Positions 7,230-40,304 of a DNA stretch of 64,000 nt are shown in pieces. A program made the translations under genes and the position numbers. This DNA comes from Scyliorhinus canicula (Eukaryota): NCBI RefSeq assembly GCF_902713615.1, contig NC_052152.1, positions 35,129,810 to 35,193,809 of the forward strand. Reading direction: 5' to 3'. Numbering within the stretch: position 1 is the first letter of the stretch; each line of letters opens with the position of its first letter. Under the pieces are notes generated by a model that was not told where the DNA came from, ran no database searches, and saw only the letters and a program-made list of their open reading frames with translations.

Positions 7230-7260
<31 letters not shown>

Positions 7261-15757: not shown

Positions 15758-15869
15758 CTAGGAAGTCAGATTATGTTCTGGGGTGCTGCATTTTTGCATC
15801 TTGATAACCCTGTCCAACTCGTCAAGGCAGGGTTTGATTAATTTGCTCTGTGTGTATGCAATTCTGAGT
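15758..15869 (-). CDS. cut8: cut8-like terminal exon 7 (RLRIAYTQSKLIKPCLDELDRVIKMQKCSTPEHNLTS*)
   Basis: Acceptor ttcttttctcttacag, phase 2 matches exon 6, TAG at 15758-15760. Confidence 0.82.
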
Positions 15870-18800
15870 CTGTAAGAGAAAAGAACAGTTATTTCATGGC
15901 CAAAGAATGGCTGTGCTTTATTAACAAAATTGCTTGTAAAACATCACTTCCTTGAATTACGACACAAGTGCATAAACATACAGCATAATGAACATCAAAT
16001 CTGCCTCCCCAAAATAGTTTAAATGCTTGCTGATGCGTTGTCATGAATAAGAACTGTGTGAAGAACTGAGTGGGTGCTGGCATATTAATGGGCACCTGTT
16101 TTAAACAGAGTATTAGTACACATGAAAGTAAATTCAGATGACAGCCACCAAGAAAATGCAGTGTTATTGTAAAATAAGTGGATCAGCTCTGGCTTTCCAC
16201 ATGGCTTCAGGAACTAAACATATTTTTGCTGCAGCATTCCAAAAGGCAATGCAATCCACAAGTTGGTGGTGAAGCAGTAGAGTGGTCAACATATGCATGC
16301 ATGTCAAGCTAACGTCGAGTGCAAGAGAGCAAGTAAGCGCAAGGCTTCAGACCAAAAAGGAAAACAATACATGAAGCTTTATTGCACTGTGAAGTGTTGA
16401 GATACTGTTCAATTACAGATAAAAGGAGACAACGATTGGGGAAATATTGTGTTGGTAGATTTTCCCAATTGTTCAGAGTTGCTCTTTGTTTTTGAAAGAA
16501 ACACGAGCCAAATAAATTGACACTTAATAAACAGGCAGTTCATATAGGGGAGCAGAAGCAAAGATTCACCAGAATGCCCTCAGACTAAAATGGTAATTGA
16601 TGAGGACAAGCTGCACAAAAAGATCTCGGTTCAAGGTGATAGAAAATCATTGAGTGATGTAATTTTATGTAGGGAAGTTATTCCCTCTGGTGGGGTAGCG
16701 CAGAATAAGGCGCCATAACCTTCAAATTAGAGCTTGGCTGTTTCGGGGAAATGGTGTGAAGTACTTTACACAAAAGGGAAATAGAAATTTGGAACTTTTT
16801 CGCCCACACCTTCCCCAAAAACCTACTCAGTCTAGATCAATTGAAAATGTCAAAACGGAGACTGATACTGTTACCCTACTCTTTTAAAGTCTCTCGGCGT
16901 AGTTATTTTTGATATGCGAGCCTGGAGAATTAGAAGTTGCTATTTGACCATGGGAATTCTTTGCTCAATTCTTTGCTTTCACAGTGTATTGCATTTACGC
17001 CACTGCTGGCCTTGAAGTCTCATTGATATATCCCCTCCCCAGCCCAGGTGAGAGCAAGCTGTAATAACATTGCCCCACCAGTTGAACATAGAACAGTACA
17101 GCACAGAACAGGCCCTTCGGCCCTCGATGTTGTGCCGAGCAATGATCACCCTACCCAAACCCACGTATCCACCCTATACCCGTAACCCAACAACCCCCCC
17201 CCCCCCCCATACCTTACTTTTTAGGACACTACGGGCAATTTAGCATGGCCAATCAACCTAACCCGCACATCTTTGGACTGTGGGAGGAAACCGGAGCACC
17301 CGGAGGAAACCCACGCACACACGGGGAGGACGTGCAGACTCCGCACAGACAGTGACCCAGCCGGGAATTGAACCTGGGACCCTGGAGCTGTAAAGCATTT
17401 ATGCTAACCACCATGCTACCGTGCTGATATTAGGCAACTCCGCTCAGACCAGATGTTGAACTCGGAAACTTCCTGGTTTGTGCAGCTCAGTTCTACTTTG
17501 CCCATCATCTCTCCAACTGAGCAGTCGGGGATACAGGTTTATTCATCAATAGATTAATTAGGAGAGAAAAAAAGAAGTTGATACTCAAAATATGAAGATT
17601 TCCTTTGTATAGAACATAGAACAATACAGCACAGAACAGGCCCACATATTTGTGTGACATTGAGATACTGGACGAGGCAAAGGTATAGCAAGCAATTTTA
17701 TTTTTTTTAAAAACAGTATCCTTGTCCTATTGGTAAAAGAGACACCTAAAGGTCCAGCAATTTCCCTAGTCATCCCAGTTTGGGTTGGGACAGGGGGCAT
17801 GAAGAAAACAAAAAGGTACTACAATTCAGTAACCCCTAATGAAAGTATGAATATTATGGCATGGGTAGGATTTGGCTGGATGATTCTTGCACCAAAATAG
17901 CCTGTCAAGGTACCAAAGGGATCTTAATAGCCAGATCCTGGCAAGGGGGAAAAGCAAAGAGCAAATTTGACAGAAAAATTACAAGAAAATTAGGAATTGA
18001 AAAGATTATAAAGAAAAGGTCAGTCTTCAATTTCAATTCAGTCGTGCAAGACATTTCCCATTCAGCTGCTTAGTGACATTAAATGGGAGAGGAGAGGAGA
18101 CAGGAACCAAAAGAAAATAAGAGCAAAAATGTGACAATGTCCTAAAATGAAAGAGAATACAGTACTTCAAGCCATCCTCAAAGCCATTCAAAAGTCACCA
18201 ATCTCACAGAAACCTCCATCCATTAGCCATTTAGAATAGAGTTCAACATTATTTTTAAACACTAGCTTTCGGAGCAGTGCTCCGAACGCTAGTGTTTGAA
18301 ACAAACATGTTGGGCTTTAACCTGGTGTTGTAAGACTTCTTACTGTGCTCACCAAAGTCCAACGCCGGCATCTCCACATTATTTTTAAAAACGCATTTTC
18401 AAATTCAGAAAAACTAATTCATTTTCAAAAATCTGAGATAGATTTAATTACAAAAGACAGGTAGACAGCACAGCATAAATAGGTACCTTTTCTTGAGTCC
18501 TTCATACTTCTCCAATTCTAAGCAGCTTCTCTGCAAGCTTGTCATGCACTGAACAGCTAAAGCAGTAAAACATTGTTGTGTGCTTTCATTATGGAAGCTA
18601 TTATCCCACTGAGGAAGTTCACTTGTACATCGCCAGGCAATTAGTACATAGTCTAATGCAGTTTCCCAGCACTCTGCTCGCAATAATAATCTCCCTTGTT
18701 CCAAGCAAATTTTCTGCAAGGCAATAAGATTTGATGCATTACTAAAAGCATTTCCAGAAGTCACTTTTGTCTTGTTACACAGAATTTTCTAATGGCCCAC

Positions 18801-21800
18801 CAGTTGAACTTGGCAGCATGTTTCCATTAAGAACAGGAGATTGGGCTTAATAGAACCTAGAAAGAAAATGGTTCCCCATTTCCTCTTCATAATGTCACAT
18901 GCCGTGGTCAAGAATTCAAAAATCCTGCCTTCATACTTGAATATGTTTAAAACTTTGTGTACATCATAAACAATAAAAAGTAGGATGATTTTTTTTTTGC
19001 TTTTACTTAGCTGGTGTTTTTAAACAGTATTAGCAAGAGGAAAATTGTCAGCAATGGCCTTGGAAGTATTGATGCAAGATATTGAATTCACATATACAGT
19101 TGATGTTGAATCAACTCACTAGGTTGCAGGTACATAGGGCAGCACGGCGGCACAGTGGTTAGCACAGCTGCCTCACTGCACCGAGGTCCCAGGTTCGATC
19201 CCAGCTCTGGATCACTGAGCGTATGGAGTTTGCACATTCTCCCAGTGTTTGCGTGGGCTTTGCCCCCACAACCCAAAGATGTGCAGGTTAGGTGAATTGG
19301 CCATGCTAAATTGCCCCTGAATTGGAAAAAATTAATTGGTACTCTAAAATAAATAAAAAAAGATTGCAGGTACATGTTAGAGTTAGATCAGGGTGGGGAG
19401 GGACATACTCCATCTCACCCAAGATCAGCATTTTGACCCAAGGTATTTCTAATTTATATTGAAGGCTTCAAAACTGCAGCTGGTCAGTCAGATTCACAGA
19501 TACAACCTAATCAAATGGTGCTGTTGAATCTGAGGCGATGACAAAAAAGTGGGGAAAACAAAGTAGATAAAATTGAGTAACTATGGGAGACACAGTGGTT
19601 AGCATTGCTGCCTCACGGCACCAAGGACCCGGGTTCGATCCTGGCCCTGGGTCACTGTCCATATGGAGTTTGCACTCCCACAACCCAAAGATGTGTAGCC
19701 AAAAGAGAAAATGCTGGAAAATCTTAATCCTGTTTGGCAGCATCTGTAGGGACCGAAAAGAGTTAACATTTCTAGTCCAGATGACCCTTTGTGGGTCATG
19801 TGTATGGTAGGTGGATTGGCCACGTTAAATTGGGAAAAAAAGAAATTGGTACTTTAAATTTATAAAATAATTGAATAACTACTGAAAATGCAAGGTGAAA
19901 AAGGTAACCCAAGGATTCAGTGAATTTATAATAGCCAAATGAATGAGGTGAAGCATTGCAGACTTTTAGTAGCTGACAGTAGTCAACTGGCAAGTTGCTG
20001 CAAAGTAGACAGAATGCTGAATTACATAACCAGAGGGCAAGCAGCTGCTGGTGACCAAGCCATTGAAGTGGTGGATGTCTGAAGAAATTTGAGGTTTTTC
20101 AACCTTAAAGTAACCAAAGATATTACGGCATTATTAGTTCTTCAGTGTAAACCTAGATAGGGCAAGAAGGACATGGTTGTGAACCAGTAAAAGGCAAGTT
20201 TAAGACTGAAGCAGGCTCTTCATGCAAAATTCCAAGAAATGGAATAAAATTGTTGGTGAGGAAAATGGAAGAACTAAACCATGCAAAATAGTTGCATGTT
20301 TTAGGGCAGAGAAACTAAACCAAAACCCTTTTGGATGTAAAGATTGACAAAATGCCTTGTTAGTTGTTTACCTACTCTAAACCTGGGGCGGAGGAAATTA
20401 TTTTCGTCTTCCCTTGCTCGGTGCAAAGATGTGCTCATGGCAAATAAACAATTGGATTTACAATGCCCGACACATGTATAGCATGATGTTACATGTCACC
20501 TTTCAGCCAAACCTGAATGTTTTCAGGTCTTATTACATGCAGGAATGGACAGATTCAGAGAAGGTATTGAACACATAATTATCGAGCATCCTCATTTCTG
20601 ACCTTATGACAGAGGGCAGGTTAGTCATTGGTATCTGAAGATGGTCAGACCGAGGACATTACCCCGAGGAGCTCCTGCAGCAATGTCCTGGGCTGAGATG
20701 ATTAACCTCCACAACCATATGACTTAAGCAAATTGAGAATTCCACTCCCAATTTCCATTGACAAATGTGCTGAGCTCCTTGATGTTGAGGGCAGTCACTC
20801 TAGCTTCAACTCTGGAATTCAGCTAGTTTGTGCATGTTTGGACCAAGGTTGTGAAGAGACCTGGAGCTGTGCGGCCCAAAAGAACCCAAATCAAATATTG
20901 GCGAGCAGATTCTTACGGACCACGTGCCACCTTAAGAAACGCTTGGTGACATGTTCCATCACTTCACTGACGATGGGAGTAGATCAATTAGCCAGATTAG
21001 ATTTGTCCTGCTTTTTGCAGACAGGATCTGGGCAATTTTCCACATTGCCAGGTATATGCCTGTAGCAGCTGTACTGGAACAGCTTGGTTAAGGGCACAGC
21101 TAGTTCTGGGGAACAAATCTTCAAGTTGTCAGGACACAGCCTTAGCTGTATGCCGTGTTTTCAGCCGTTTTTGATATTACATGGAGTGAATGAAATTGCC
21201 TGAAGACCAGCGTCTATGATGCTGGGGACCTCAGGAAGAGGCAGAGATAGATAATCCACTTGGCTGAAGATGGTTGCAAATGCTTCAGCCTGGTCTTCTT
21301 CGTTAACATGCTGTGCTCCCCCATTATTGAGGAGGATGTTTTGGACCTCCTCCTTGCATTAGCTATTTAACTGTCCATCAGTATTTATGACTGAATGTGG
21401 CAGGACTGTAGAGATTTTCTGTCATATGTCTAATATTCTGCTTCTGCTGTTTTGTATACACAGTCCTGTTTTGTAGATTTACCAGTTTGCCACCTCATTT
21501 TTAGCTATACCTGGTGCTGCATTGGCATACACGTCTACAATTTTGATTAAACCAAGGTTGATCCCTTGGCTTGATGGTATTGGTAGAATGAGCAATATGC
21601 CGAATCATAAGGTTAGAGATTGTGGCTAAATGCAATTCTGTTGCAGCTGATGGCCCACTGCATTTCATGCCCAGTTTGGAGCTATTAAATCTATTGAGCT
21701 TCTCACATTTATTACAGTGGTAGTGCCACATCACGTGCAAAGACAGGTCTTGCCAGAAGGACTGTGCAGTGGTCACTCCCATCAATCTCATGGATAGATG

Positions 21801-24800
21801 CACCAGTAGTAGGTAGATTCAGGAGGAGGTCAAGTAAATCTTTCCCGCTTGGTTCTCATACTACTTGCTGCAGGCCTAATTTGGCCTTCAGGATTCACCA
21901 GTAGTGATGCTACCAAGACAGTGTTGGGCATTGAAGCTCCCCAACAGAGAACCTGTTTCCTTGCTACCCTCATGCTTACTGCAAATGGTGTTCAACATGG
22001 AGGAGCACCATTTCATCATCTGAGGGAGGGAAGTGGTAACCAATGGGTATCAGGGGAAAAACTCTCCGCTGGCTGGAGTCGTACATTTTTAAAAACATTT
22101 CCAATTAAGGGGCAATTTAGCATGGCCAATTCAATTCACCTACCCTGCACATCTTTGGGTCATGGGGGTTAGACCCACACAGACACGGAGAGAATGTGCA
22201 AACTCCACACAGACAGTGACCAGGAGCTGGGATCAAACCCGGGTCCTTGGTGCCGTGGTGCGGCAGTGTTAATCGCTGCGCCACCATTGCTGCCCCTGCT
22301 GGAGTCATGCCTAGCACAAAGGAAGATGGATTGTGGTTTTTGGGAGGTCAGTCATCTCAGCTCCATACATCGCCGCAGGGGTAATGTTCTGAGCTCACCC
22401 GGCTTCAGTTGTTTCCACCAAAAGAGCAGAAGTGGGGATTTTCGCTGATATTTGCGCAATGTTCAGCATCATTCGTGACTCTTCAGATACTAAAGCAGTC
22501 CCTGTCAGAATGCAGCAAGACAGACAATATCTAGGCTTAGGCTGACAAGTGGCAAGTAAAATTTGTGCCACACAGGTGCCAGCCAATGGCCATCACCCCA
22601 TGACATTAAATGGCTTTACCATCAATAAATCCCCCACTATCAACATCCTGGGTATTACCAATGACCAGAAACTGGGAATTGTGGCACATAATTCCCTGCT
22701 TTGTCTGCGTGGGTTTCCTCCGAGTGCTCCGGTTTCCTCCCACAGTCCAAAGATGTGCAGGTTAGGCCATTCTAAATTGCCCTTAGTGTCCAAAAAGGTT
22801 AGGTGGGGTTACTGGGATAAAGGGGGATAGGGTGGAGGCACGGGGCTTAAGTGGGGTGCTCTTTCCAAGGGCCGGTGCAGACTCAATGGGCTGAATGGCC
22901 TCCTTCTGCACTGTAAATTCTATGATAACTCACCTCCTGACTGCCCAAAGCCTTCCCACTATCTACAAGGCAGAGTGTGATGGAATATTCGATATTTGCC
23001 GTGGTGAGTGCAGCTCCAACAACACAAGAAGTTGGACAATATTCAGAACAAAGAAGCTCACTTGATTGGCATCACATTCACACCCTCCAACACCGACCAC
23101 CATGTGCACCATCTACAAGATGCACTACAGAACTCACCCAAGGCTCCTTAGGCTGCACCTTCCAAACCCATGACCACTACCATCTAAGAAGGACAACGGC
23201 AGCAGACACGGGGAACACTATCACCTGGAAGTCCTCCCCTCACCTCCAGCACTGTGGGGGTACTTGCACCTCATGGTCAGTAGTGGTCCAAGAAGTCAGC
23301 TCACCACCACCTTCTTATGGGCAATTAAGGATGGGCAATAAATGCTGGCATAGCCAGCGACAGCCACACCCCATGAATGAATTGATTAAAAAGAAAATCA
23401 GGTGGTTTCCTTTCTCATATTAACCTGAAACGAGACTTCATGCCGTCCAGAGACAATGTTAAAGACTCACAGGGCTTCTTCTGCCTGACTCTATCCTAAC
23501 AGTGGATCAGGACATACTCCGAGATGGTATGAGAGGTGTCTAAGGCAGTGACTGCAAGATATTCTGTGAGTCAAGCTGTATCTTAACTAGTCTGCAGAAG
23601 AGCACTCAATTTTGGCACAAGATCCAACATGTTGGAGAGGATTTTGCAGGATGGACTGGCAGCATGTGCCTTTCATGTCTGTGGTGCCTTGGTTGATGCC
23701 AGGTGGTCTATTCGTTCTTGACTTTTCTGTGGTGGTTTGATGTTCTAGATCAGCATTTACAGACCTTGACTGGTATGTGCACGCAATGAAAACAGCTTTA
23801 AGCATTACTATCAAATAGCCTGCATTACTATCAAATTTTGTGCATTAAATGGGTAGAAAAATTGAATGAAATTCAACCCATTTATTTTGATGTTCCCCTC
23901 GCACCATGTGCAAGAACAATGTTGGTATAGAATACAAACCTTAAAAGCCTGAAGATGGACGTGCGCTTTTCGGTAGCAGTATGCATCTCTATTGGAACCC
24001 AAGCGCCATCGAGGTATTGATCGGTACATGTTGATTTTACTCAGCTCCAGCTGTTCCTGAGCAAACTTCAAGTTCAGCGATGGAAGAACCAATTTTAAAT
24101 CCTGTTCAGGAAATTTCAAAAAAAGTCTCCTTGAACTAAATATCCTTATTCATAAACTGAAATATTTTTGTCACGGAATAGTTATGAAAGTGAAGAACTA
24201 AAAGTACTGCTGCAATGCAAGTACATACCTCTTCTTCAAGTTCTGGATATCTGTGCAATAAAAGAGTGCGAACAAGCTGGGAAGAAGTTAGGTCATTTAG
24301 TTGGAATTCTAAACTTGCATCTGGCTTAAAATTCAGTCGCTGTTTCTTGAAAGGCAGTTCTAAGGAAAAAGAAAAGAAGCTGAATTTTAACTCTTCCAAA
24401 TACATTTTTAAAACTTTTTAATGGTAGGTGTTGTCTTGTTTAAAAATTCAGTCATGTGATGTGGACATCTCTGGCTAGGCCAGCGTTTATTGCCTATCCT
24501 CAATTTTCCTAAAGAAGGTGGTGGTGGGGCACAGGGGGTCGTCAGGTAGGGTTCCATGATTTTAACCCAACAACAGTGAACAAATAGCCTTACTTTTATG
24601 TTCAATTCCTCTCATAATAAAGCATAGCATTCCATTAGCCTTCTTAATTACTTGCTACCCTGCATACTAACTTGTGACCCAGCACTAGAACACCTTATAC
24701 CTCAGAATTCTGCAGTCATTCTCCATTTAAGTAACGTTCTGCCTTTTCACTGCCAAAGTGAACTTCACATTTTCCCACATTATACTCCATCTCCAGAGTT

Positions 24801-27800
24801 TTGCCCATTCACTCAAACCTATTTATATCCTGACTCATGCCTTATACTTAAAATTCCAATTAAGGGGCAATTTAGCATGACCAATTCATCTACCCTTTTT
24901 TGGGTTGCGGCAGTCAGTAACTCAGAGCCAGGACCAAACCCGGGTCCTCGGCAGCGTGAGGCAGAAGTGCTAACCGTTGCACCGCTGACTTGTGCCTTGT
25001 AGATGGTGGACAGGCTTTGGGGAGTCCCTCAGGTTCAATCAGCACCAGTCAGCTCTCAAAGGGGATTCTGCCTATGGTCTACTGGGACTGTGGCAACATT
25101 CAGATCTGTGGAGACTATCGACTCATGGGTGTTCAGCTGCAAATAGTTTAAGAATTGAACTAGAATACTGGGGTAAAAGCAAAATACTGCAGAGGCTGGA
25201 GTCTGAAACAAAAACAAAGGAGAGTTACTCGCCACAGGATTCCTAGCCTTTGACCTGTTCTTGTAGCCATAGTATTTATATGGCTTGTCCAGTTCAGTTT
25301 CTGGTCAATACTAACCACCAGGATGTTGACAGTGCAGGATTCAGCAATGGTAATTCCATTGACTGTCATGGGATGGTTAGATTCACTGGTTGGAGATGGT
25401 CATTGCTTGGATCATACCAAGACATGAAACAAAATATCGATAACATCCTGGCAACTTGATAATTTAAAACATGGACAAACACTGGCTGAGGCCTTGACTG
25501 GCTACACAAAAGGAATTTCCAGCCGAAAACCACAGCAACCTGGTTATCTCCAAAGAGACACTTAGCCTCCTGTGGGTGCAGAAATTAAACTCCAAGCAAC
25601 TGCACAAAAAAAAAAATAAGGCAGGCTTTGGCCAATGGAGACAAGGAGCCCGAAACCTTTGGTAAACCTATCAATGGATGAAACATTAACTATTGCAATA
25701 ATCCAGATCAGGAATATACATCCTTGACCCAAACCATGGGGAATAAGTGGGAGTTGTGACACATGATTTCCCCCCACCGGAGCTGTGTCACATGGCCGCC
25801 ACTACCAAAGTAGAGTTCGGTCGAAGTTTAAATTCCCGACTCTCATTTACGCTGTTCATAAGATATAGGAGCAGAATTAGGCCATTTGGCCCATCGAGTC
25901 TGCTTTGACATTCGATCATGGTTGATGTCATCCTGGCCTTAACTCCATCGTCCTGCATGTTCTCCATAATCCTTCAACCCATTAACACTATCAAAACCTC
26001 TAACTCCCCCTTAAATTTCCTCACTATCCCAGCATCCACTGCACTCTGGGACAGCGAATTCCACAATCCTTTGGGAGAAGTCGTTTCTCCTCAACTCATT
26101 TTAAATTTGCTACCTCTTATCCCAAGACTATGATCTCTCGTTCTAGAATGCCCCACAAGAGGAAGCATCGCTCCACGCCTACTTTATCCATACCTTTTAT
26201 CATCTTGTTTCTACTGGGAGTGTCTGAACTTCTGCACCAGTGCCTACTACAAGACTAATTCATTTCTAGGTGCTTAGCTCATTGTGAAAATCAGCGCTAC
26301 TGGAAAGTTAATAATCTCACACCAGCCTGCTTACCTCTGAAGGAATACATCATTGGACTTTTGATTGTGGACTCACGTGAAACAATTATTTTCTGTGCCT
26401 TTGCCCTGTATTTCTTTCGCATATCCCTCTTATTTTATGAATGCAAAGTGTGTGTGTGTGTATGGTTGGGGGGGGGGGGGGGGGGGGGGGGGAGGAGAAA
26501 GAGAACTTTGCGAATCCTCTTCCCACATTTTGAGAGTGTATAACATGAACTAACCCTATCTAAAGTTTGCTCTGTGCTTTTTAAATAGAGGATTGGATCA
26601 CAAAACTAGGGTTGGGGAAAATCCACTAACACTTTCAAAGGCGGGAGATCAAATATCAAAAGCACCAGTTTACACAGTGGAGAAATCAATGCGTTTTGAC
26701 TGCCCGTAACACCTGCCACTTGTATGGCATGAATATCACTTGCCACTACATTGTCATGCTGCATTTGGATATGGACTGCTTCAGCATTATATTTAATCTT
26801 CCAACATACTAGGCTTCCCAAGATAGTTTTTGTAATGCGCTTCCACTACTGAAATCTGGCATAACAGAGGACTTACCAGCACTGCATAGGTGTCTCATCG
26901 TGTGAATAATAAACAGCACTCGACAGATCACACCAGGCATTCAATCATTGGTGAAAAGTTAAGACGTGAAAATATAACATCTGTATCCATGGTGGATACT
27001 GATTCGGATCTCCAACACTAAACTCTAAAAAAGAAAATCCCGATTTGGATGCAAGCTCTGGAGAAATACTCAGGCTTGTATTATATGCTAAATCACACAC
27101 CTTGCTTGCTGCCACTTTGCAATGTTTTTGTACGACAACTAGAAGCTGCTGGTGAACTGAAGCACAATCTTCTTCGGTCTCCAAACTTTCTCCTGGCAAG
27201 AGATGGGTCTTCAGAGATATTTTCTGTTGAAAGGAAAAGAAAAATGTACTGACAGCAAAATGACAAATTTAGACAACAGCATATGACTACTTACAGTCAA
27301 GTATAAGCAAAGGTGACCCGATTTCAAAAATCTTGCCTTTTAACCAAATAACCACAAGAGCTGTCCAGGACTTCAATCTACCCACTTTAAGGGTAGCAGT
27401 TTTGTCTGTATTTGAGTAAGCAATTCAGGGACAGTAAATCATAAAAATCTTCATGCACAGCTTGGAAGTACATTTGTTACAAATTTAACCATGAAGATCA
27501 TTTTAGTCTTCAGCTCAGCAAAAGCAGGTAGTCACACCCAGCACAAAGGAAGATGGGGGTGGCCGTTGGGCCCCAATCAACTCCGCCTCAAGATACCACT
27601 TGCAGGAGGTTCCTTGGGGTAGGTCTAACCATCTTCAGCTGCTTCAATGGTCTTCTCTCCATCAAAAGGTCAAAATCGGGCAGCACGGTGGCCTAGTGGT
27701 TAGCACAACCGCCTCACGGCGCTGAGGTCCCAGGTTCGATCCCGGCTCTGGGTCACTGTCCGTGTGGAGTTTGCACGTTCTCCCCGTGTCTGCGTGGGTT

Positions 27801-30800
27801 TCGCCCCCACAACCCAAAAATGTGCAGGGTAGGTGGATTGGCCATGCTAAATTGCCCCTTAATTGGAAAAAATAATTGGCTAATCTAAATTTTTTTTTAA
27901 AAAAGGTCAAAATCGTTGATTATACGGTATTCAATTTTGTATACAACTCCTCAATTAAACAGTGTGCCCACAGACAGCAAGATATCCAACATTCATCAGG
28001 CTTAGGCAGCTAAGTGACAAGTAACATTTGTGCTACACAAGCAACAGGCATTGACCACCTCCAACAAGAGGGTGCCCAACCAGCTTTCCAAGGCATATTA
28101 CTATTGCTACATCTACCCACCATCGATATCCTGTGTTAATCATCTGACCAAAAACTTAATGGGACCAGCCACATAAATATTGTGCCCACAAGAGTCTGTC
28201 AGAGGCTGAGCATTCGGAGGCATATGACTCATCTCCCGACTCTCCCAAGCATGCCTAACATCTACAAGGCACACAAGCGATGGAATTCTTTCCATTTGCC
28301 TGGAGGAGAACATCTCCAGATTTACTTCCTCCACCATCACCATACCAAGGCTGCAGTGTATATATCCAAAAGATGCACAGCAGTACCTAATCAATGCTTC
28401 TCGACAGCATCTTCCAAACCCACAACCTCAAATATCTAGAAGGATGAGGGTAGAAAATGCATTGAAACCCCCCCCCCCCGAAAGATTCCCTCAAATAACA
28501 CACCAACCTGATTTGAAAAAAATATCAGCATGGTCAAGAAATGTTGAAAAGCATTTAAAGGGGTGCAGCATTGATTTACCAGAATTATACCTTGTAATGT
28601 AACCCTTACAATTTAACCCTTAGATTCAAAGATGGGATTATACAAACTTGGGTTGTATTCCCTAGCATTTTAAAGATTGGTATAAAGGGGATAGGGAGAA
28701 CCTATTTCTGATGGCTGGAGTGTCTAGGGCATAATCTACATATTGGAGTAAAGCTATTCAGGAGTTAAATTAAGTAATACTTGCAAGTACAAAGGGCTGT
28801 AGAAGTTTGGAACTTAATGGCAATTGATGCCAGTCAAATTGTCAATTTTAAATGAGTGAACAGATTTTTGGGATATGATTAATCCGAAAGCATGTCACAT
28901 CAGCCATGACCTCACTGAATAACGGAACAGACTTGTGGGGTTTATTCCTGTTCCTGATGCAGTGCAGCGGAGTTGACCAATACATGTTAACTTTCAACTC
29001 TGCTTAACCCATCTCAGACAGATGGTGCAAAAGGTAGAAGTAGAAATCGCTGCCAGACTGTTACTGTACTCTTTGTAGCTATCTTAGAAAGGCACTAGAA
29101 TAGCCCATTCCCCCTTCAATTTCTCAGAAAAATTAGATAAAGTGGAGAAGGAAAATATCCTGCAATGGGCCAGGGAACAGAACTGCAAATGGGAAGAGAA
29201 CATGGTCCGAATCTATCAATATATCAGAGCAGAGCTAGTGAAGAGGTGTGCTGGGTTTAACAAGGCCAAGGCGATGCCACACCGAAGGCAGATTCAGGTC
29301 GGGGTACTGTACCCGTCAAAACTGTGGGTGACTTTCGATGGCCACGAGTCCTATTTTGAAACCCCAGGGGAGGCCAATGACCTCAGAGACCATAAAATGG
29401 GAGATAACTGAATGTTGATGGGAGATGGAGGAGCTGAAACAGTGGGCATTATGGGGGTCGGACGGGGTGTTTGGTCGCTGGGGTGGTTTGTTAAGGGGCA
29501 ATAATTTTGTAAGGAGCAAATTACCCCCACCCACTCCCACCGCCTGTGCTGTATTTCTTTTTGGAGAGGGTGTGGGGTGCGTGTGTGAGGGTCCAGGGGG
29601 AGCCGTTTGCACAGACCAAGGAGGGAAGGGTGGGTGGAGTGTAGCCACCTGGGGTGGCCACGTCCCGATTTCAAAATGGACACTTGCAAGGAGTACAGGG
29701 AAAATTGGACAGTAGTAGGAAAACAAGCATGTGCAAGGTTTGCCTGTGGATCAATACAAATGATTGCGACATGGTCCAATTAATTGGGGCCAAATTCAGG
29801 GACCACCCAGAAGGAGCAAAACCCTTTGGGGTATAAAGAGGAGTCCCCAAAGACAGATCGCTCTCTTCTTCTTCACCTTCATCCTGGCCTTGGCTCTCAG
29901 CGACGAGAGGCCCGCCAAGCACCAGCCAATTAAGTCTAAGGTCAACGCACGCTACGAGATGGGCGCTTCTCGCTACTATTCTATACCAGTTCGAAGCCAG
30001 CAGTCTCAGAACCGGACAACGGCCATTGTTCCTCTGACTGAGTGGGCACCCGAAGCTAAGTATAGGCTTTTAGTAGTAGTTGTAGTTTAGTGAGTAGAGT
30101 TTGTGCATGAGTAATAATTGACTGTGTAAATAAATGTGCATTGATTTCAAACTTACTAACTGGTGTATCGAGTCTTTGATCAGTATTCGGTTTTGAACCT
30201 TGTGGTGGTATCGAAAGGATACCTGGCGACTCTTGAGCAAAGGTAATTAAAACAGAGCAAATTAAGGAAAGCATATCGAGCAACAGGAGCCTTCAGGCAG
30301 GAGCTGCCATGCTGGCAGGCAATGCTGGTGAATGGAAGTGAGGTGGGGAGGTGGCCACGGGGATGGCCAAATTGCAGCAGGGGAGGCAGTATTAGAGAAT
30401 GAGCGTGGTTATGGGCAGACAAGTGCTATCTTGGATGTGCCCGGTTCAGGGCGAAATCAAAGGAGGTAGAATTGGAAGGGGATGATGGCCGACGGTGGAG
30501 GTAAAATTCGTAACATGGAATGTACGGGGACTGAACGGGCTGGTGAAGAGATCTCGGGTCTTCGCGTACTTGAGGAGCTTGAAGGTGGGGGTGATTTTTC
30601 TGCAGGAGACATCTGTGGGTGAAGGATCAGGTAAGGTTGAGAAAGGGACGTGTGGGTCAGGGAGAGTGGCCATCTTTCTGAGCAAAACGGACACCGTTTG
30701 TAGGGGCAAAGGAAGTGCAGGACCCGGGTGTGAGGTATGTGAAGTGAGCGGGGTGCTGTGAAGGGGTTGCTGGGAACGATTCCGGACCTAGACACACATC

Positions 30801-33800
30801 AGTTGATTATGGGTCGATTTTAACTGCGTGCTGGAACCAAGGGTGAATAGGTCGAGCCCCAGGTCAAAAAGAAGGTCGAGGATGGTGAAGGAGTGGGGGG
30901 GGGGGCAGTTTATGGAAAGGATGAGAATGGTGGATCTGTGGAGGTTTAGGAACCTGAGAGAACGAGTACTCCTTCTCGCAAGTATACAAGATACACCCCA
31001 GAATTGAAATTTTCGTAGTGAGCCAAGCGGGGGGGGCGAATACACGGGAATCGTGATTTCAGACCATGCGTTGCACTGGTTGGAGGTTAGACTTAGCCTG
31101 AGGCAGGAGCAGAGGCCAAGATGGAGGCTGGATTCGGGGCTTTTGGCAGACATGGGGTTCTGTGAGGAGGTCTGTGATCAGAGATTACGTGGAGTTGAAT
31201 CAGAATGGGGAGGTGTCAGCGGCTATGGTTTGGGAGGCGGTGGTACAGGGCTGAGGTTATCTCGTTCAGGCGCACAGTGAGAGAAGTATGGACGGGTGTT
31301 GGATAGGAAACAAGAGTTTTGGGTTGCACACGGGAACAAGGCAAGGGTGTCCGCTGTTGCCGTTATTGTTTGCGCTGGCAATGGCCCCTAGTTGCAATTT
31401 AGGATAGCCAGGGGCAGGTTCAGGTATCTGGGGGTACAGGTCATGGGAGAGTAGTCGAGGGTGCACAAGTGAAACCTGACAACATTGGTGGAGGAGATTA
31501 GGGGGGATTTTAAGAGATGGGATACACTACACCCGACATTGGTGGAAGGGTCAAGGTGGTTAAAATGAACGTTTTGCCAAGGATCCCGTTTGTATTCCAG
31601 ACCCTCCCGACCTTTATTCTGAAGGCCTTTTCCCGGAAATTGGACAAAGCGATCTCGGAGTTTATATGGGCGGGGAAATAGCTAGGGTGAAGAAGGCCCT
31701 GTTACAGAGGCACAGGCAGAAAGGGGGGTTGGCGCTACCAAACCTGCTGCATTACTACTGGGCAGCGAATGCAGAGAAGGTAAGATGGTGGTGGGAATGA
31801 AAGGGGTTAGAATGAAGGTAGAGTCCTGTCGAGGATCCAGCCCGAGGGCCATGGTGACAGCATCGCTTCCACTGGCACCGGGGAGATACACAGTGAGCCC
31901 GGTGTTGCAGTCCACGATTAGTGTGTGGAACCAGTTGAGGAGACACTTTAGGATGGAGGGGATGTCGGTGCTGACACATTGTGCGAAAAGCATGGGTTTA
32001 AGTTGGGGGAGACGGACGGCATGTATAAGAACATAGAACAGTACAGGTCCTTCGGCCCATGATCTTCTGCCAACCATTTATCCTAATCTAAGGTCAACCT
32101 AACCTACACCCCTTCAATTTACTGCTGTCCATGTACCTGCCCAAGAGTCGCTTAAACATCCCTAATGACTCAAGAGTCCACCACTTCTGCTGGCAGTACA
32201 TTCCACACATCCACCACTCTCTGTGTAAAGAACCCACCTCTGACATCTCCCCTATACCTTCCTCCAATCACCTTAAAATTGTGTCCCCTCATGACAGCCA
32301 TTTCCACCCTGGGGGCATCACGGTGACGCAGTGGGCTAGTCCTGTCCTCATGGCACCGAGGTCCCAGGTTCGATCCCGGCTCTGGGTCACTGTCCGTGTG
32401 GAGTTTGCACATTCTCCCCGTGTTTGCGTGGGTTTTGCCCCCACAACGCAAAGATGTGCAGGGTAGGTGAATTGGCCACTTTAAATTGCCCCTTAATTGG
32501 AAAAAATGAATTGGGTACTCTAAATTTATAAAAAGAAAATTTTTTTTTTTGAATATATGTTTGGAATATGATACATTTAGAAAAAAGGAAAATTCAGACA
32601 CACACACACAAACAGACCTGGTGTTGCATTCAGATTTTGAATCAAACAATCATCCGATGGATCTGTTCTCAGGAAAGATGTAGGAATATTGACACGAAGT
32701 GTTGTTAACCGTGATTGCGTTCTTGTAGAATTCAGAATATCTTCATAGGACCGGCGCAGGTGAACTGAAGGCACAAAAGGTCTATTCAATATTTGTTCAA
32801 CAGAATTTTGGCTTATTTATGTGACAATCCAGTAAATTATTTTGCTTCCATTGTTTCAAATGCAAGTGCTGAGCTTGCCTGCGATGCTCTCCCATTTGGT
32901 CTAGGGGCAGGGAATAAAAACAAACTTAAGTCAAGATTTTTTAAAAACAGTATTGCTCACTATGGAATATACAGCAGTAAGCACTTGCACCGCATCATAA
33001 ATAACAGTTGTGTTTTGAAGTGACTTTTGCACAAGTGGAAATATATTTCCTTCCTAAGATAATCAAAAAATGTTAGAATTTTTGAAATTGCTAAAGCATT
33101 GAATGCCCCACCAAAGTAACAAAATGCACTATAATTTGTAAAATAAGAACCAGTAGGTGGGACTTGAATTCAGTAATACTTTTGAATGGCATGGTATGCT
33201 GGTTAGAGTCTCCCTTGTTGGAGATGGTCATTGCCTGGCATAAATGTTACAAGCCACTTCGCACCCCAAGCCAGAATGCCACCCAAGCCATGCCGCAAGT
33301 GGGCAGACTGCTGAATTGCAAAGAGAACTGAGCATTGCATCATCAGACAACATCCACACTTCTGATCTTATGATGGAGGGAATGTCATCAGCGAAGTGGC
33401 AGAAGATAGTTGGGGCTAGGACACTATCCAGAGAAACTCCGGCAGCCGTGTCTTGGGGCTAAGATCATTGGCCTTCAACACTGCAACCAACTTCCTTTGT
33501 GCTCGGTATGACTCCAGCTAGTGGAGAGTTTCACCTGGATTCCCATTAGCTTCAATTTTAAAAAGCTCTTTGATACCACAATTGGTCAAATGCCGTCTTG
33601 ATAAAGAACAAGTACTCTCACCTCGAGATTTCAGTTATTTTGTCCATGAAATCTGGAGCCCAAACTGAGCATTATGGGCAAAGGAGGTTATTGGTGATTC
33701 AGTGCCACTTGAAAGCACCATAGACAATACAACACCTTCCATCACTTTGCTGACAATTGACAGTAGACTGATGGAGCAGTTATTGGATTCATCCTGCTTT

Positions 33801-34757
33801 TTGTGGACAATATTGCTTGAAGTTGAAAACACATGATAAATGTGACTTCAACCAGTTAGGTAACCACGGCCAAGATGACACGACTGGCCAACAGGGGTCT
33901 CATGACTTGAAAGGTTAGCGCTCACCAATTCGGGGGGGGGGGGGGGGGGGGGACTCATGGACAAGGTTGAAAGAATAAATCTCTCCATACCTCGCGTTTT
34001 ATTTGTGCTCAAAATTTATCGATCACATAAAAATCTATAATTTTATCTCCACAGACGCTCCCCGAGTATTTCCAAGATCCAAAACACTTTGTTTTATATC
34101 TAATTAATAATCAGGTGTTCATATACTATAAAATATGCTATATTGATCAATATAGTGGATAGGTAAACATCTGTCAGAGAGCAATATACAAGTTTATTTT
34201 TTTTAAATCAATATGATGGTTAACTAAACACCCTTTAATTGCTGGCTCGTGTTTGGCGCCTAGTGCGACTTTTATTTTCGACAGTAGTGAACAATACCCT
34301 CAAATTATTTGAATGAATAAATCCACTTTCTACATTAGGTTTATTTACTAAGATCACCGGCACAATATTTTATACATTTACGTTTAAATGATACATTTTG
34401 CGCGAACATGCAGAGTGGCGAAAACCGCTTTCCTCATCTGCCCGCCAATACCACAGTAAAATGACTCTCCCCTTAAAAGCACATAACTCAACTTTTTTCT
34501 TGCAAGCGCGACACAGATCAGTAGTTTAACTTCACAGATGCAATACTTCGTGTGTATTACCATTGTATTGACTTTCAACAGGTTTTAAAACTGGCAAGCA
34601 ACTCAGCTCCCTCTCCCTCCCCCCCTCGCCTCGTCTCTGTTGAGCGCCTTATTTTTTCCGCGTCTATTTAAAAATGGACTTTTTACTCACCAGCAAGTTT
34701 AGGCTGCGGGTTTGGGATTTCCACCAGAACTTGTCTCAGGTTCACAGCAGGAGCCAT
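15758..34757 (-). CDS. cut8: Cut8/Sts1-family nuclear proteasome tether homologue (multi-exon gene; 273 aa if exons 1, 3a, 4, 5, 6, 7 are joined)
   Basis: Phase-compatible GT-AG exons 34691-34757, 27101-27223, 24229-24359, 23940-24101, 18487-18713 and 15758-15869 total 822 nt. The joined 3' exons read LNDLTSSQLV..RYPELEEE-DLKLVLPSLNL..KINMYRSIPRWRLGSNRDAYCYRKAHVHLQAFK-KICLEQGRLL..WETALDYVLIAW..ELPQWDNSFHN..QCFTALAVQCMTSL..IKPCLDEL, matching my recollection of metazoan Cut8 motifs. Family call is by recognition only. Confidence 0.8.
17084..17425 (-). mobile_element. HE1-type SINE (long form)
   Basis: Same consensus. Confidence 0.88.
18257..18380 (+). mobile_element. Short Penelope-like insertion with a 5' inverted hairpin
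   Basis: 20-bp stem AAACACTAGCTTTCGGAGCA/TGCTCCGAACGCTAGTGTTT; flanking duplication ACATTATTTTTAAA. Confidence 0.6.
18487..18713 (-). CDS. cut8: cut8-like exon 6 (KICLEQGRLL..LPQWDNSFHN..LKK)
   Basis: Acceptor attgccttgcag, donor AAG|GTACCT, 227 nt phase 0/2; contains the LPxWDNxxHN motif. Confidence 0.88.
19137..19362 (+). mobile_element. HE1-type SINE with TSD
   Basis: Flanked by TTGCAGGTACAT duplications. Confidence 0.92.
19585..19868 (+). mobile_element. HE1-type SINE split by a Penelope-like terminal fragment (19698-19797)
   Basis: SINE halves joined across the duplication ATGTGTA. Confidence 0.75.
20400..23760. mobile_element. Patchwork of decayed non-LTR (CR1/L2-like) LINE fragments and SINEs
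   Basis: Recurrent segments (IKPRDQPWFN, TINILG..DQKL) also seen at 25.2-25.4, 33.2-33.8, 48.2-49.1 and 61.8-62.3 kb. Confidence 0.65.
23940..24101 (-). CDS. cut8: cut8-like exon 5 (DLKLVLP..MYRSIPRWRLGSNRDAYCYRKAHVHLQAFK)
   Basis: Acceptor cctgaacag, donor AAG|GTTTGT, 162 nt phase 0/0, 127-nt upstream intron. Confidence 0.88.
24229..24359 (-). CDS. cut8: cut8-like exon 4 (ELPFKKQRLNFKP..YPELEEE)
   Basis: Acceptor ttttctttttccttag, donor GAG|GTATGT, phase 1/0, open. Confidence 0.85.
26877..27024 (-). pseudogene. cut8-like exon 3b candidate, disrupted
   Basis: Acceptor ttttcttttttag and strong donor CTG|GTAAGT; 148 nt (3n+1); stop codons in all frames. An internal ATG at 26940 is in frame with exon 4. 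Confidence 0.45.
27101..27223 (-). CDS. cut8: cut8-like exon 3a (ENISEDPSLARRKFGDRRRLCFSSP..SKQ)
   Basis: Acceptor tcttttcctttcaacag; open 123-nt phase 1/1 exon; donor CAAG|GTGTGT; basic NLS-like cluster. Confidence 0.65.
27678..27905 (+). mobile_element. HE1-type SINE with TSD
   Basis: Flanked by AAAAGGTCAAAATCG duplications. Confidence 0.92.
29130..32020 (+). mobile_element. L1-clade LINE remnant
   Basis: ORF1 C-terminus (RIYQ..AELVKR), endonuclease TWNVRGLNG/FLQET, GTRQGCPL, LPNL..YYWAA. Confidence 0.85.
29640..30285 (+). mobile_element. Solo LTR inside an L1 remnant
   Basis: TGTAGCC..GAGCAACA, 4-bp TSD GGAG, TATAAA and AATAAA inside. Confidence 0.85.
32312..32550 (+). mobile_element. 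HE1-type SINE
   Basis: Same consensus. Confidence 0.88.
32618..32900 (-). pseudogene. cut8-like exon 2 candidate with an internal 1-nt frame disruption
   Basis: Pyrimidine-rich acceptor ttccctgcccctag and donor CAG|GTCTGT; 283 nt (3n+1). The entry frame stops at TGA 32797-32799, while the +1 frame is open from 32816 to the donor (ISQNSVEQILNRPF..NLNATP). Confidence 0.55.
34691..34757 (-). CDS. cut8: cut8-like coding exon 1 (MAPAVNLRQVLVEIPNPQPKLA)
   Basis: ATG at 34757; strong donor CTG|GTGAGT; phase 1 matches downstream exons; next to a promoter-like CCAAT/GC-box region; encodes RxxLxxIxN. Confidence 0.7.
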
Positions 34758-35809: not shown

Positions 35810-36101
35810 TGATGAGACCATCAATTCACAAGACACATGATTGGAAGTAAACCGTGGTTTTAATAGTCTTACAACTAAGCCAGCCTGCGACCAGAGGAAC
35901 TGAGAGCAGGCCTACGGCTGCAGAGCTTTATACTTCCGGTTAGTGGGAGGAGCCATGGGCGGAGCCAAGGGTGGAGCCAAGTACAAACTCCTCATCTCCC
36001 CCTATGGGCAGAGCCACTCAACGGCTCGTATACAGAGCCCACAAGGACACAATACATGTAATACAACACAGTGTGAATTACTAGGTATCTAATTCACCAC
36101 A
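35810..36101 (-). repeat. 3' LTR of the Gypsy element
   Basis: Direct repeat of 40340-40631. Confidence 0.95.
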
Positions 36102-36289
36102 TTCACACCCTGTAAAAAAAATTAAGTCCGGCGGGGGGTGATGGGTCTACAAATTGAGCCGGTCCGGCGGCCGAGTCGTCCTTTGGGATCGGTGGAGCAC
36201 CTGGGTTGCAGCCTCTTCGAGTGGCTGAGTGGGGGCGGTCGGCGAGGGTACGATGGTGGACTCCAGGGGTGATTCGGTCCGAGCGTCCT

Positions 36290-38940: not shown

Positions 38941-39056
38941 CGCTGAGTTGCGGGTAGTCGGCGGCTCGATCAGCTGTGCTGGAGTGACCCCGTGATGACT
39001 GTCCGCTGACGTTGTAGTCGTTGAGATGAGGTTCAGAGACTGGAGAGGATGGAGCC

Positions 39057-39361
39057 TGTTGGAACCAACAATTCTACGGACACGTGCTTGTAGGATTAGA
39101 ATAGCAATTTTAATATACTCACAACAGAGCCAGCCGGTTAGCCATTGAACTTTCGGTGAACTGGCCGGCTGACCATGTGGCACTGATCTTTATACAGCAG
39201 CTCCAGGGGAGGAGTCCTGGGCGGAACCAAGGGAAAAGCCCAGTACAATTCTCGAGCATTCCCAGAGCTACTCCCAGTGGTGGTCAGGTAGTGCAACTGC
39301 ACTTACAATATAGGCACATGTATATATAGATTATAATACGGTGTGAACCACATTCACCACA
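39057..39361 (-). mobile_element. Solo LTR of a related Gypsy family inserted at the gag-pol junction
   Basis: TG..CA ends, TSD GAGCC (39052-39056 / 39362-39366), same ATTCACCACA terminus as the host LTR. Confidence 0.9.
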
Positions 39362-39369
39362 GAGCCCAA

Positions 39370-40304
39370 GATGGCCGTCCCCCGTGGATCGCGCGTGGCG
39401 GGCGGCGAGGAAGATGGCGTCCAAGATAGCAGATAGCTATATGAGTCGCACGTGGCCGGCCGCGTGGAGGAGGATTGCCAAGATGGCGGCCCCCATGAGT
39501 CGCACATGTCGGGTGGGGGCGGGGTCGGCATACAGGCTGCAGCCCTACGGGGCCTGTGGGGCCTTTCTTCGCTAGGCATAACTGGGTATAGTGTCCTTTG
39601 CGACCGCAGCTGCTGCAGGTCGCGTTGCGGACTGGGCAGTGCTGCCGTGGGTGTTGGGGCTGCCCACAAAAATGGCACGCTGGTGCTGCATAGTGGGTGG
39701 GTGGCTGCGCGGCGCAGGCCTGGAGCAGTCGCTGGTCGGGGGCCCATGATGGGATCGCTTGGTCCGCGGTGAACGAGGTGAGGCTGCGGGATGAGACCTC
39801 CATGGTTGTAGCTAACTCTACAGTGTCCTCCAAGTTCTGGGCCCCTTTCTCAAGCAACCATTGGCGCACATAGTTGGACCTGAACCCTGCCACGTATACA
39901 TCCCGGACCGCGAGCTCCATATGTTGGGCGGCTGTTACAGCCTGATAATTGCAGTCCCGAGCTAAGGCTTTTAAATTGCGCAGGAATTCTTCCAGCGACT
40001 CCGCGGGGCGCTGGCGGCGGATTGTAAAAATGTGGCACGCGTAGACCTCGTTGGTGGGCCGCACACACATTTGATCGAGCATAGCCATGGCCTCCGTATA
40101 CGAGGTAGTACAGTTAAGTTGTGTAGAGATACGATGGCTCACCCTTGCGTGCAGTAGGCTGAGTTTCTGCTCCTCCGTAGTTTCTGAAGTGCTTGATTCA
40201 GCCAGGTAGGCCTTGAAACATCTGAGGCAGTGTAGAAAGATTTATTTCACTTCTGCAGCCTGCGGGTCGAGTTCTAGTCGGTCAGGTTTGAGGGCTGATT
40301 CCAT
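39370..40304 (-). pseudogene. gag: Gypsy gag (disrupted)
   Basis: ATG at 40304 (MESALKPDRLELDP), early stop; zinc knuckles CHFCGQPQHPRQHC and CSSCGRKGHYTQLC. Confidence 0.85.

What the first reader, a model, noticed from the sequence alone, without database searches (positions are those of the whole stretch)
15758..34757. A vertebrate (shark) Cut8/Sts1 nuclear-proteasome tether gene
Seen in sequence: four consecutive GT-AG exons (24229-24359, 23940-24101, 18487-18713, 15758-15869) splice without stops into a helical domain containing MYRSIP.WRLGSNRDAYCYRK..HL..FK, EQGR.L....W...LDYV..AW....LPQWDN..HN and IKPCL..L. Established knowledge: S. pombe Cut8 and S. cerevisiae Sts1 bind importin-alpha and the 26S proteasome to localise it to the nucleus; invertebrate homologues such as Drosophila exist; in mammals the unrelated AKIRIN2 is the described proteasome import adaptor. 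Inference: cartilaginous fish kept the ancestral Cut8/Sts1 route in its native intron-containing form. This would place its loss inside vertebrates and suggest coexistence with AKIRIN2. The ORF track shows only unlabelled fragments of this gene.
Basis: partly seen in the sequence, partly recalled or inferred. Interest (0 to 1): 0.9.

Follow-up and report, generated by a model that had tools for sequence, protein, structure and literature searches.

The report
Catshark Cut8/Sts1 proteasome tether gene
An intact seven-exon gene of the small-spotted catshark encodes a clear relative of the yeast protein that brings proteasomes into the nucleus, and the same gene is annotated, unnamed, in sharks, rays and most ray-finned fishes, although recent papers state that vertebrates have none.

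Summary
The four exons have GT-AG borders and splice in frame. With three upstream exons they form a 969-nt CDS of 322 aa on the minus strand, from the ATG at 34757 to the stop at 15758. The product is identical to RefSeq XP_038657676.1, "uncharacterized protein LOC119968861", of Scyliorhinus canicula.

It belongs to the Cut8/Sts1 family. Pfam PF08559 scores 87.9 bits (E 1e-24). A family profile hits the S. pombe Cut8 crystal structure at E 1e-16. The AlphaFold model superposes on it at Z 17.6, 2.0 Å over 141 residues.

The gene tree follows the species tree. The last three introns have the same position and phase in catshark, paddlefish and amphioxus, so inheritance was vertical.

The gene is not shark-specific. 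Orthologues are annotated in at least 14 chondrichthyans and over 100 ray-finned fish clusters, including medaka, stickleback, salmon, gar and bichir. No sarcopterygian or cyclostome protein appeared in three searches. The likely loss is therefore on the lineage to tetrapods, but this is not proven.

The function (importin/proteasome adaptor) is inferred from homology only. The sequence databases already hold these proteins, while papers from 2023 and 2026 deny any vertebrate homologue. I rate it a new member of a known kind, of moderate interest.

The parts
15758..34757 (-). Whole coding span of the Cut8/Sts1-family gene (LOC119968861 of Scyliorhinus canicula): 7 coding exons, 969-nt CDS, 322 aa.
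   Evidence: NCBI calls the gene over the same 19,000 bases of LR744036.1.
34691..34757 (-). Coding exon 1 (67 nt, residues 1-23). It holds the start ATG at 34757 and the first half of the conserved N-terminal motif R..L.EIP.PQPK. Donor GTGAGT; the following intron is phase 1.
32618..32764 (-). Coding exon 2 (147 nt, residues 23-72). It holds the RRSYEDILNS part of the N-terminal motif, followed by a poorly conserved, predicted-disordered linker.
27101..27223 (-). Coding exon 3 (123 nt, residues 72-113, phase 1-1). It is a symmetric cassette carrying the basic cluster RRKFGDRRR. It is skipped in an annotated sawshark isoform, and the region is absent from bowfin, gar and teleost proteins.
24229..24359 (-). 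Coding exon 4 (131 nt, residues 113-156). It holds the basic KKQR cluster just before the helical part, and the first helices of the Cut8 domain (Pfam match starts at residue 108).
23940..24101 (-). Coding exon 5 (162 nt, residues 157-210). It encodes a long helix and the YRSIPRWRLGSNRDAYCYRKA motif. The exon length is identical in paddlefish and amphioxus.
18487..18713 (-). Coding exon 6 (227 nt, residues 211-286). It encodes the core of the helical bundle with the W..ELPQWDN.FHN motif. The exon length is identical in paddlefish and amphioxus. It is held completely in contigs of at least 13 runs guessed to be RNA.
15758..15869 (-). Coding exon 7 (112 nt, residues 286-322 plus the TAG stop). 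It encodes the last helix (LIKPCLDELDRVI) and a short tail.

Best explanation
This is the catshark orthologue of the Cut8/Sts1 'tethering factor for nuclear proteasome' family. It is an intact, apparently transcribed, single-copy gene inherited vertically from the metazoan ancestor, and it is shared with other cartilaginous fishes and with ray-finned fishes.

Shown here: the gene model, family membership by sequence profile, the predicted fold, orthology, and the distribution among annotated proteomes.

Inferred from what is published for yeast Sts1/Cut8: the C-terminal helical bundle (about residues 160-314) binds assembled 26S proteasomes. The helices before it mediate dimerisation. The roughly 125-residue disordered N-terminus, with its basic clusters (RR 26-27, RRKFGDRRR 82-90, KKQR 116-119), recruits importin-alpha. 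The protein would thus carry or hold proteasomes in the nucleus and then be degraded there itself. In fishes it would act beside AKIRIN2.
For: - Gene model: seven GT-AG exons give an open 322-aa frame identical to XP_038657676.1.
- Family: Pfam Cut8 PF08559 scores 87.9 bits against a cutoff of 26.2, E 1.1e-24, covering profile positions 39-238 of 241. A metazoan profile hits PDB 3q5w 'Protein cut8' at E 1.2e-16 and nothing else significant.
- Fold: the AF2 model has pLDDT above 90 over the bundle. The best Foldseek PDB hits are Cut8 3q5x and 3q5w, with probability 1.00. VIA-align gives Z 17.6 and rmsd 2.0 Å over 141 residues; the next hit, a designed repeat protein, has Z 12.9. All 30 top Swiss-Prot AFDB hits are fungal STS1.
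- Orthology: in the gene tree vertebrates, Chondrichthyes and Actinopterygii are each one clade with 100/99 support, and the internal order follows the species tree. The last three introns have the same phases (0, 0, 2) and flank exons of identical length (162 and 227 nt) in catshark, paddlefish and amphioxus.
- Constraint: 91% identity to Mustelus, 68% to chimaera and 40-46% to ray-finned fishes, with intact ORFs in more than 100 species.
- Transcription: exon 6 is held at share 1.00 in contigs of at least 13 putative RNA runs from several studies. Most of these same runs hold only 0.11-0.12 of the 5.95-kb genomic stretch, whose exonic share is 0.087.
- Mechanism in yeast: PMC10808114 (the six-helix bundle suffices for proteasome binding; an N-terminal NLS binds Srp1; Sts1 is short-lived).
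Against: - No functional datum exists for any vertebrate or other metazoan member.
- No classical bipartite NLS pattern is present. The KKQR cluster is not conserved in teleosts.
- The stem branch leading to vertebrates is long (0.81 changes per site). Identity to S. pombe Cut8 is only about 19-20%.
- AKIRIN2 is described as essential for proteasome import in vertebrate cells, so a second route may be redundant, tissue-restricted or repurposed.
The runs' RNA label is a guess ('RNA?').
Confidence: 0.6

Rival explanations
1. It is a true Cut8-family orthologue, but in jawed fishes the protein has been repurposed. It would use the conserved helical bundle and the vertebrate-specific N-terminal motif for something other than nuclear import or tethering of proteasomes, for example a tissue- or germline-restricted adaptor for another cargo. 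AKIRIN2 would do the proteasome job.
For: The branch to the vertebrate clade is long. A sharply conserved N-terminal motif, R..L.EIP.PQPK...RRSY, is invariant in 25 fish proteins and only loosely similar in invertebrates. The basic clusters that could serve as an NLS vary or are missing in teleosts, and exon 3, which carries one of them, is a skippable cassette. The gene was apparently dispensable in the tetrapod lineage.
Against: The bundle is the most conserved part apart from the short N-terminal motif (64% mean column identity among fishes). It retains the family-wide signature residues P186, H205, W226, W237, P244, W246, H251 and N252. It superposes on Cut8 at 2 Å. In yeast this is the proteasome-binding part (PMC10808114).
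Confidence: 0.33
2. It is a gene in decay.
For: Read as continuous DNA, the N-terminal exons do not line up in one frame, because introns 1-3 are all phase 1.
Against: With the GT-AG borders at 34691, 32764/32618, 27223/27101 and 24359 the frame is continuous from ATG to stop. The product equals the RefSeq model. The N-terminal 36 residues are the best conserved stretch among fishes (70% mean column identity). The same exon phases occur in paddlefish.
Confidence: 0.02
3. It is a contaminant, a horizontally acquired sequence or an assembly artefact, not a genuine shark gene.
For: None found.
Against: The gene lies on a 211-Mb chromosome record next to TBC1D23. It has six spliceosomal introns holding shark-type repeats and retroelement debris. 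Orthologues in at least 14 chondrichthyans branch in species order.
Confidence: 0.01

Closest known systems
S. pombe Cut8 (PDB 3Q5W/3Q5X), nuclear proteasome tether
   Same: Same Pfam family (PF08559). The helical bundle superposes at Z 17.6, 2.0 Å over 141 residues. They share the motifs P..R.G..RD..Y.R and ELP.(W/F).N..HN, a basic cluster directly N-terminal of the helical part, and a disordered N-terminus.
   Different: Only about 19-20% identity. The metazoan N-terminal motif was not seen in the part of Cut8 aligned here. The catshark gene has six introns. No data exist on ubiquitin-dependent turnover, on nuclear-envelope or lipid binding, or on the mitotic 'cut' role.
S. cerevisiae Sts1, karyopherin-alpha/26S proteasome import adaptor
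   Same: Same family and the same predicted architecture: disordered basic N-terminus, small helical domain, six-helix bundle. All top Swiss-Prot structural hits are STS1.
   Different: Sts1's non-canonical bipartite NLS has no demonstrated counterpart here. Binding of Srp1 or the proteasome, and ubiquitin-independent degradation, are untested.
Invertebrate Cut8 homologues (Drosophila homologue cited in the literature; Lingula 'STS1', Acropora 'cut8', amphioxus, Ptychodera)
   Same: 33-50% identity over the domain. Intron positions are shared with amphioxus. The N-terminal R..L.EI element is shared.
   Different: The vertebrate proteins form a separate, long-stemmed clade with a compacted N-terminal motif. 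None of the invertebrate proteins has been studied functionally either, as far as the papers held here show.
AKIRIN2, the described vertebrate proteasome import adaptor
   Same: Analogous logic according to the literature: an NLS-bearing, dimeric, short-lived adaptor that binds proteasomes (PMC8961600, PMC12979645).
   Different: Unrelated in sequence and fold. The catshark protein hits only Cut8 in Pfam. AKIRIN2 binds the 20S alpha ring and IPO9, whereas Sts1/Cut8 are reported to contact 19S components and importin-alpha.
14-3-3 proteins
   Same: Weak structural resemblance of the helical bundle (Foldseek E 0.05-0.15).
   Different: TM-scores of 0.2-0.27 and no sequence match. Not a member.

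Membership tests
Cut8/Sts1 (Pfam PF08559, tethering factor for nuclear proteasome) | Sequence matches the family profile above the curated threshold over most of the domain. | tested here: met
   87.9 bits against a cutoff of 26.2, E 1.1e-24, profile positions 39-238 of 241. Exons 5 and 6 hit adjacent profile segments on their own. A metazoan profile hits PDB Cut8 at E 1.2e-16.
Cut8/Sts1 (Pfam PF08559, tethering factor for nuclear proteasome) | All-helical architecture: a small N-terminal helical (dimerisation) domain followed by a six-helix, 14-3-3-like bundle, as in the Cut8 crystal structure. | tested here: met
   AF2 helices at 129-133, 137-149, 155-183, 196-222, 226-241, 249-272, 277-293 and 295-314, with pLDDT above 90 from about residue 170. 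VIA-align Z 17.6 and rmsd 2.0 Å to 3q5w_B. Foldseek top hits are 3q5x and 3q5w.
Cut8/Sts1 (Pfam PF08559, tethering factor for nuclear proteasome) | Orthology: descent from the same ancestral gene rather than convergence or transfer. | tested here: met
   The gene tree is congruent with the species tree, with 100/99 support for the vertebrate, chondrichthyan and actinopterygian clades. Three intron positions and phases and two exon lengths are identical from amphioxus to catshark.
Cut8/Sts1 (Pfam PF08559, tethering factor for nuclear proteasome) | Disordered N-terminal region carrying a functional NLS that binds importin-alpha. | tested here: inconclusive
   Residues 1-140 are predicted with low confidence or as disordered. 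Basic clusters lie at 26-27, 82-90 and 117-119. KKQR aligns with the basic stretch of Cut8. There is no classical bipartite pattern, and the clusters vary in teleosts. Binding is not testable here.
Cut8/Sts1 (Pfam PF08559, tethering factor for nuclear proteasome) | Homodimerisation. | not testable with these tools
   Only the presence of the corresponding helices is predicted.
Cut8/Sts1 (Pfam PF08559, tethering factor for nuclear proteasome) | Binds the 26S proteasome and is required for its nuclear localisation; is itself a short-lived proteasome substrate. | not testable with these tools
   Known for yeast Sts1 and Cut8 (PMC10808114, PMC8961600). No experiment exists for any vertebrate member in the papers held here.
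AKIRIN family | Sequence similarity to akirin. | tested here: not met
   The Pfam scan of the full protein returns only Cut8. Structural hits are Cut8/STS1 only.
14-3-3 family | 14-3-3 sequence profile and nine-helix fold. | tested here: not met
   No Pfam hit. Foldseek E 0.05-0.15 and TM 0.2-0.27.

The most novel reading that the evidence does not exclude
Jawed fishes (sharks, rays, chimaeras and ray-finned fishes, including medaka, stickleback and salmon) run two proteasome nuclear-import or tethering adaptors side by side: the ancient Cut8/Sts1 route and AKIRIN2. The Cut8 route would have been lost once on the lineage to lobe-finned fishes and tetrapods, leaving AKIRIN2 as the sole, and hence essential, adaptor in mammals. 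The invariant N-terminal motif R..L.EIP.PQPK...RRSY would be a new short linear motif for importin or proteasome engagement or for turnover.
Probability: 0.4. Interest if true: 0.7.

Novelty: new member of a known kind. Interest (0 to 1): 0.5.

Why it matters
Current reviews and primary papers on proteasome localisation treat Sts1/Cut8 as a fungal system with a fly homologue. They state that vertebrates lack it and use the unrelated AKIRIN2 instead. A conserved, intact orthologue in cartilaginous and ray-finned fishes corrects that statement.

It also dates the loss to the lineage leading to tetrapods, not to the origin of vertebrates. Genetically tractable vertebrates such as medaka and stickleback, and fish cell lines, could then be used to test whether the two adaptor systems are redundant, divide the labour (26S versus 20S, tissue, cell-cycle stage) or have diverged.

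This is a correction and an opening, not a new kind of system. The sequences are already in RefSeq and UniProt with an automatic Cut8 domain call.

Tried and rejected
Junctions could therefore not be seen. I used the share of words held by runs for exon 6 against the whole genomic stretch instead.
- Papers: Takeda 2011 (PMC3193221) and Budenholzer 2020 (PMC7097302) are not held. Searches for Cut8+CG5199, Cut8+teleost and PF08559 found nothing on vertebrate members.
- Tetrapod and cyclostome members: I looked up 30 cluster representatives. Those nearest to vertebrates are either fishes or unnamed short fragments from metagenome and Logan contigs. AFDB cluster hits had their organisms masked and showed no hint of a tetrapod.
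- Synteny: translated ORFs from the 5.6 kb at the upstream end of the paddlefish locus, which include the 3' part of its neighbour gene, gave no hit in the window.
- Rfam: no family reached threshold in the window.
- Other long ORFs in the window: nothing except retroelement domains.
- Pseudogene, contamination and 14-3-3 or AKIRIN membership were considered and rejected (see rival explanations and membership test).
- I considered forcing the length filter of the homology search with an unrelated long first sequence, to hide the teleosts. I did not do it, because it would misuse the tool.


Full report
**Observation.** The first three have GT donors, and the last ends in a stop codon. Joined, they read as one open frame with every quoted motif. 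Exons 5 and 6 alone hit adjacent parts of Pfam Cut8 (PF08559): profile positions 87-133 at E 6e-4, and 139-199 at E 7e-11 and 42.6 bits against a cutoff of 26.2. The window has no N.

**Full gene model.** An exhaustive HMMER search with exon 6 returned 145 cluster representatives. The best was a 316-aa skate protein. tBLASTn of chondrichthyan homologues back onto the window located three further upstream exons. Reading the borders gives seven coding exons:
- 34691-34757
- 32618-32764
- 27101-27223
- 24229-24359
- 23940-24101
- 18487-18713
- 15758-15869

All introns are GT-AG, with phases 1, 1, 1, 0, 0 and 2. The CDS is 969 nt and the protein 322 aa. A separate exact-match splicing routine found the same exons. 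The protein is identical over all 322 residues to XP_038657676.1, [quoted passage not shown]. NCBI calls the gene over the same 19,000 bases of chromosome record LR744036.1.

They are not. The three phase-1 introns restore one frame, and the N-terminus is the best conserved stretch among fishes.

**Family membership.**
- The full protein scores 87.9 bits (E 1.1e-24) on Pfam Cut8, covering profile positions 39-238 of 241, and hits no other family.
- Alone against the PDB it finds only S. pombe Cut8, weakly (E 0.05). A profile of 89 metazoan homologues (A1) finds Cut8 3q5w at E 1.2e-16 and nothing else significant.
- An AlphaFold2 model built on A1 has a disordered N-terminal part of about 125-140 residues and a confident all-helical C-terminal part with pLDDT above 90.
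- Foldseek against the PDB ranks the Cut8 structures first (E 1e-5, probability 1.00, TM 0.63 by target), followed by weak 14-3-3 hits.
- VIA-align gives Z 17.6 and rmsd 2.0 Å over 141 residues (model 162-308, Cut8 71-216). This stands well above the next hit, a designed repeat protein at Z 12.9.
- All 30 best Swiss-Prot AlphaFold hits are fungal "Tethering factor for nuclear proteasome STS1".

**Descent.** A maximum-likelihood tree of 37 named proteins recovers vertebrates, Chondrichthyes and Actinopterygii each as one clade with 100/99 support. The internal order mirrors the species tree: chimaera, batoids and sharks; then sturgeon with paddlefish, gar with bowfin, and teleosts.

Exact exon maps for catshark, paddlefish (L001) and amphioxus (L002) each show seven coding exons. 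The fifth and sixth exons are 162 and 227 nt in all three, and the last three intron phases are 0, 0 and 2 in all three. This is vertical inheritance of an old metazoan gene, not transfer or contamination.

The catshark gene lies 8 kb upstream of TBC1D23 on the same strand. The paddlefish gene lies downstream of a gene with a CortBP2 domain.

**Distribution.**
- The skate query found 33 proteins, and the list was not truncated. They were 12 chondrichthyan clusters and actinopterygians from bowfin, paddlefish and sturgeon to teleosts. All carry PF08559 and all are called "uncharacterized" or "hypothetical".
- A 25-sequence fish profile found 148 hits, and the paddlefish protein found 130. The 120 listed in each case are all chondrichthyan or actinopterygian. 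They include Erpetoichthys, Lepisosteus, Amia, Anguilla, Salmo, Esox, Cyprinus, Oryzias latipes, Gasterosteus, Takifugu and Tetraodon.
- With the paddlefish query, sharks rank 10th to 14th (E about 1e-67), above nearly all teleosts. A normally conserved coelacanth, lungfish or amphibian orthologue should have been listed, and none was. No cyclostome protein appeared either.
- Named invertebrate representatives are amphioxus, Ptychodera, Lingula ("STS1"), Priapulus, Tachypleus, Acropora ("cut8"), an aphid and an ant.
- The remaining vertebrate-like representatives are fishes or unnamed short fragments.

The most economical reading is that the gene was present in the gnathostome ancestor, was kept in Chondrichthyes and Actinopterygii, and was lost on the sarcopterygian/tetrapod lineage. 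Absence was judged from annotated proteomes only, not from genomes.

**Expression.** Indirect evidence comes from run contents. Contigs of at least 13 runs guessed to be RNA, from several studies of the same organism, hold all sampled words of exon 6. Most of these runs hold only 0.11-0.12 of the 5,951-base genomic stretch, whose exonic fraction is 0.087. In other fishes, complete 255-293-aa proteins sit on 1.2-2-kb Logan contigs. For an intron-containing gene, such contigs are most simply spliced transcripts.

**Mechanism (inferred).**
[quoted passage not shown] Cut8 is its S. pombe orthologue and is required for nuclear proteasome accumulation (PMC10808114, PMC8961600, PMC11513537).
- The catshark protein keeps this layout. 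The bundle carries the family-wide near-invariant residues P186, H205, W226, W237, P244, W246, H251 and N252.
- The N-terminus has basic clusters at 26-27, 82-90 and 117-119. KKQR aligns with the basic stretch that precedes the helices in Cut8.
- There is no classical bipartite NLS pattern, and the clusters are not conserved in teleosts.
- An N-terminal motif, R8..L11..I14-P15.P17-Q18.K20...R26-R27.Y29, is invariant in 25 jawed-fish proteins. A looser counterpart exists in invertebrates: R..L.EI ... TPSPEEQIIRQRGRR. Its role is unknown.
- I estimate about 0.6 that the protein still acts as a proteasome/importin adaptor, and about 0.33 that it has been repurposed.

**Comparison with the literature.**
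[quoted passage not shown] The last statement is compatible with my results. The first two are contradicted by the fish genes. Full-text searches found no paper on a fish Cut8.

Teleosts have akirin2 (PMC2660306) and Cut8, so the two systems coexist in at least that group. AKIRIN2 in the catshark was not checked.

**Verdict.** The gene is already annotated but unnamed, and its existence in vertebrates is absent from the field's literature. I rate it a new member of a known kind, with interest 0.5.

Noticed in passing
window 27101-27223 (-), coding exon 3: This 123-nt phase 1-1 exon, which carries the basic cluster RRKFGDRRR, behaves as a cassette. The annotated sawshark isoform X2 (P0155) lacks exactly the 41 residues it encodes. 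Bowfin, gar and teleost proteins lack the region altogether. Alternative splicing could switch a possible NLS half on and off.
   Followed up: partly
protein residues 8-33 (window exons 1-2, 34691-34757 and 32618-32764): The N-terminal motif R..L.EIP.PQPK...RRSY..iL.S is invariant at 10 positions in 25 shark, ray and ray-finned fish proteins. A looser version (R..L.EI ... TPSPEEQIIRQRGRR) is seen in invertebrate homologues. No function is known.
   Followed up: partly
window 23940-24101 and 18487-18713; L001 12195-12356 and 12654-12880; L002 13392-13553 and 14971-15197 (0-based, as printed): The fifth and sixth coding exons are exactly 162 and 227 nt, with identical intron phases, in catshark, paddlefish and amphioxus.
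   Followed up: yes
window about 36100-40300 (-): A degenerate gypsy-type LTR retroelement lies 1.4 kb upstream of the start codon. Its RT-RNase H and integrase core domains, and a gag-like ORF, are split over several frames.
   Followed up: partly
window about 1-7572 (-): The 5' end of the downstream neighbour gene TBC1D23 (RabGAP-TBC, TBC1D23_C) is on the same strand. A likely first coding exon starts at the ATG near 7478 (MAAAAEEAQPVPGPGGNSSW, then GT). It is preceded by a run of about 24 G (7581-7604 as read on the minus strand).
   Followed up: partly
L001 1-5463 (paddlefish): The upstream neighbour of the paddlefish Cut8 gene encodes a 1212-aa protein with a CortBP2 domain. Together with TBC1D23 in the catshark, this suggests a conserved FILIP1L-like/Cut8/TBC1D23 block. 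The human gene order is from memory and untested.
   Followed up: no
P0158/P0198 and P0159/P0199: Paddlefish and sterlet each carry two Cut8 paralogues about 90% identical to each other, as expected after their lineage's genome duplication. Teleosts appear to keep one.
   Followed up: no
window introns, e.g. 27665-27919 and 32173-32649 (-): Repeated sequence families occur inside the introns. Near-identical translated stretches such as 'FQLRGNL.WPIHLPCT.L.CGG.THA.TGR.CKLHTDSDPEPGSNLGP' appear at least twice, probably SINE/LINE-type repeats.
   Followed up: no
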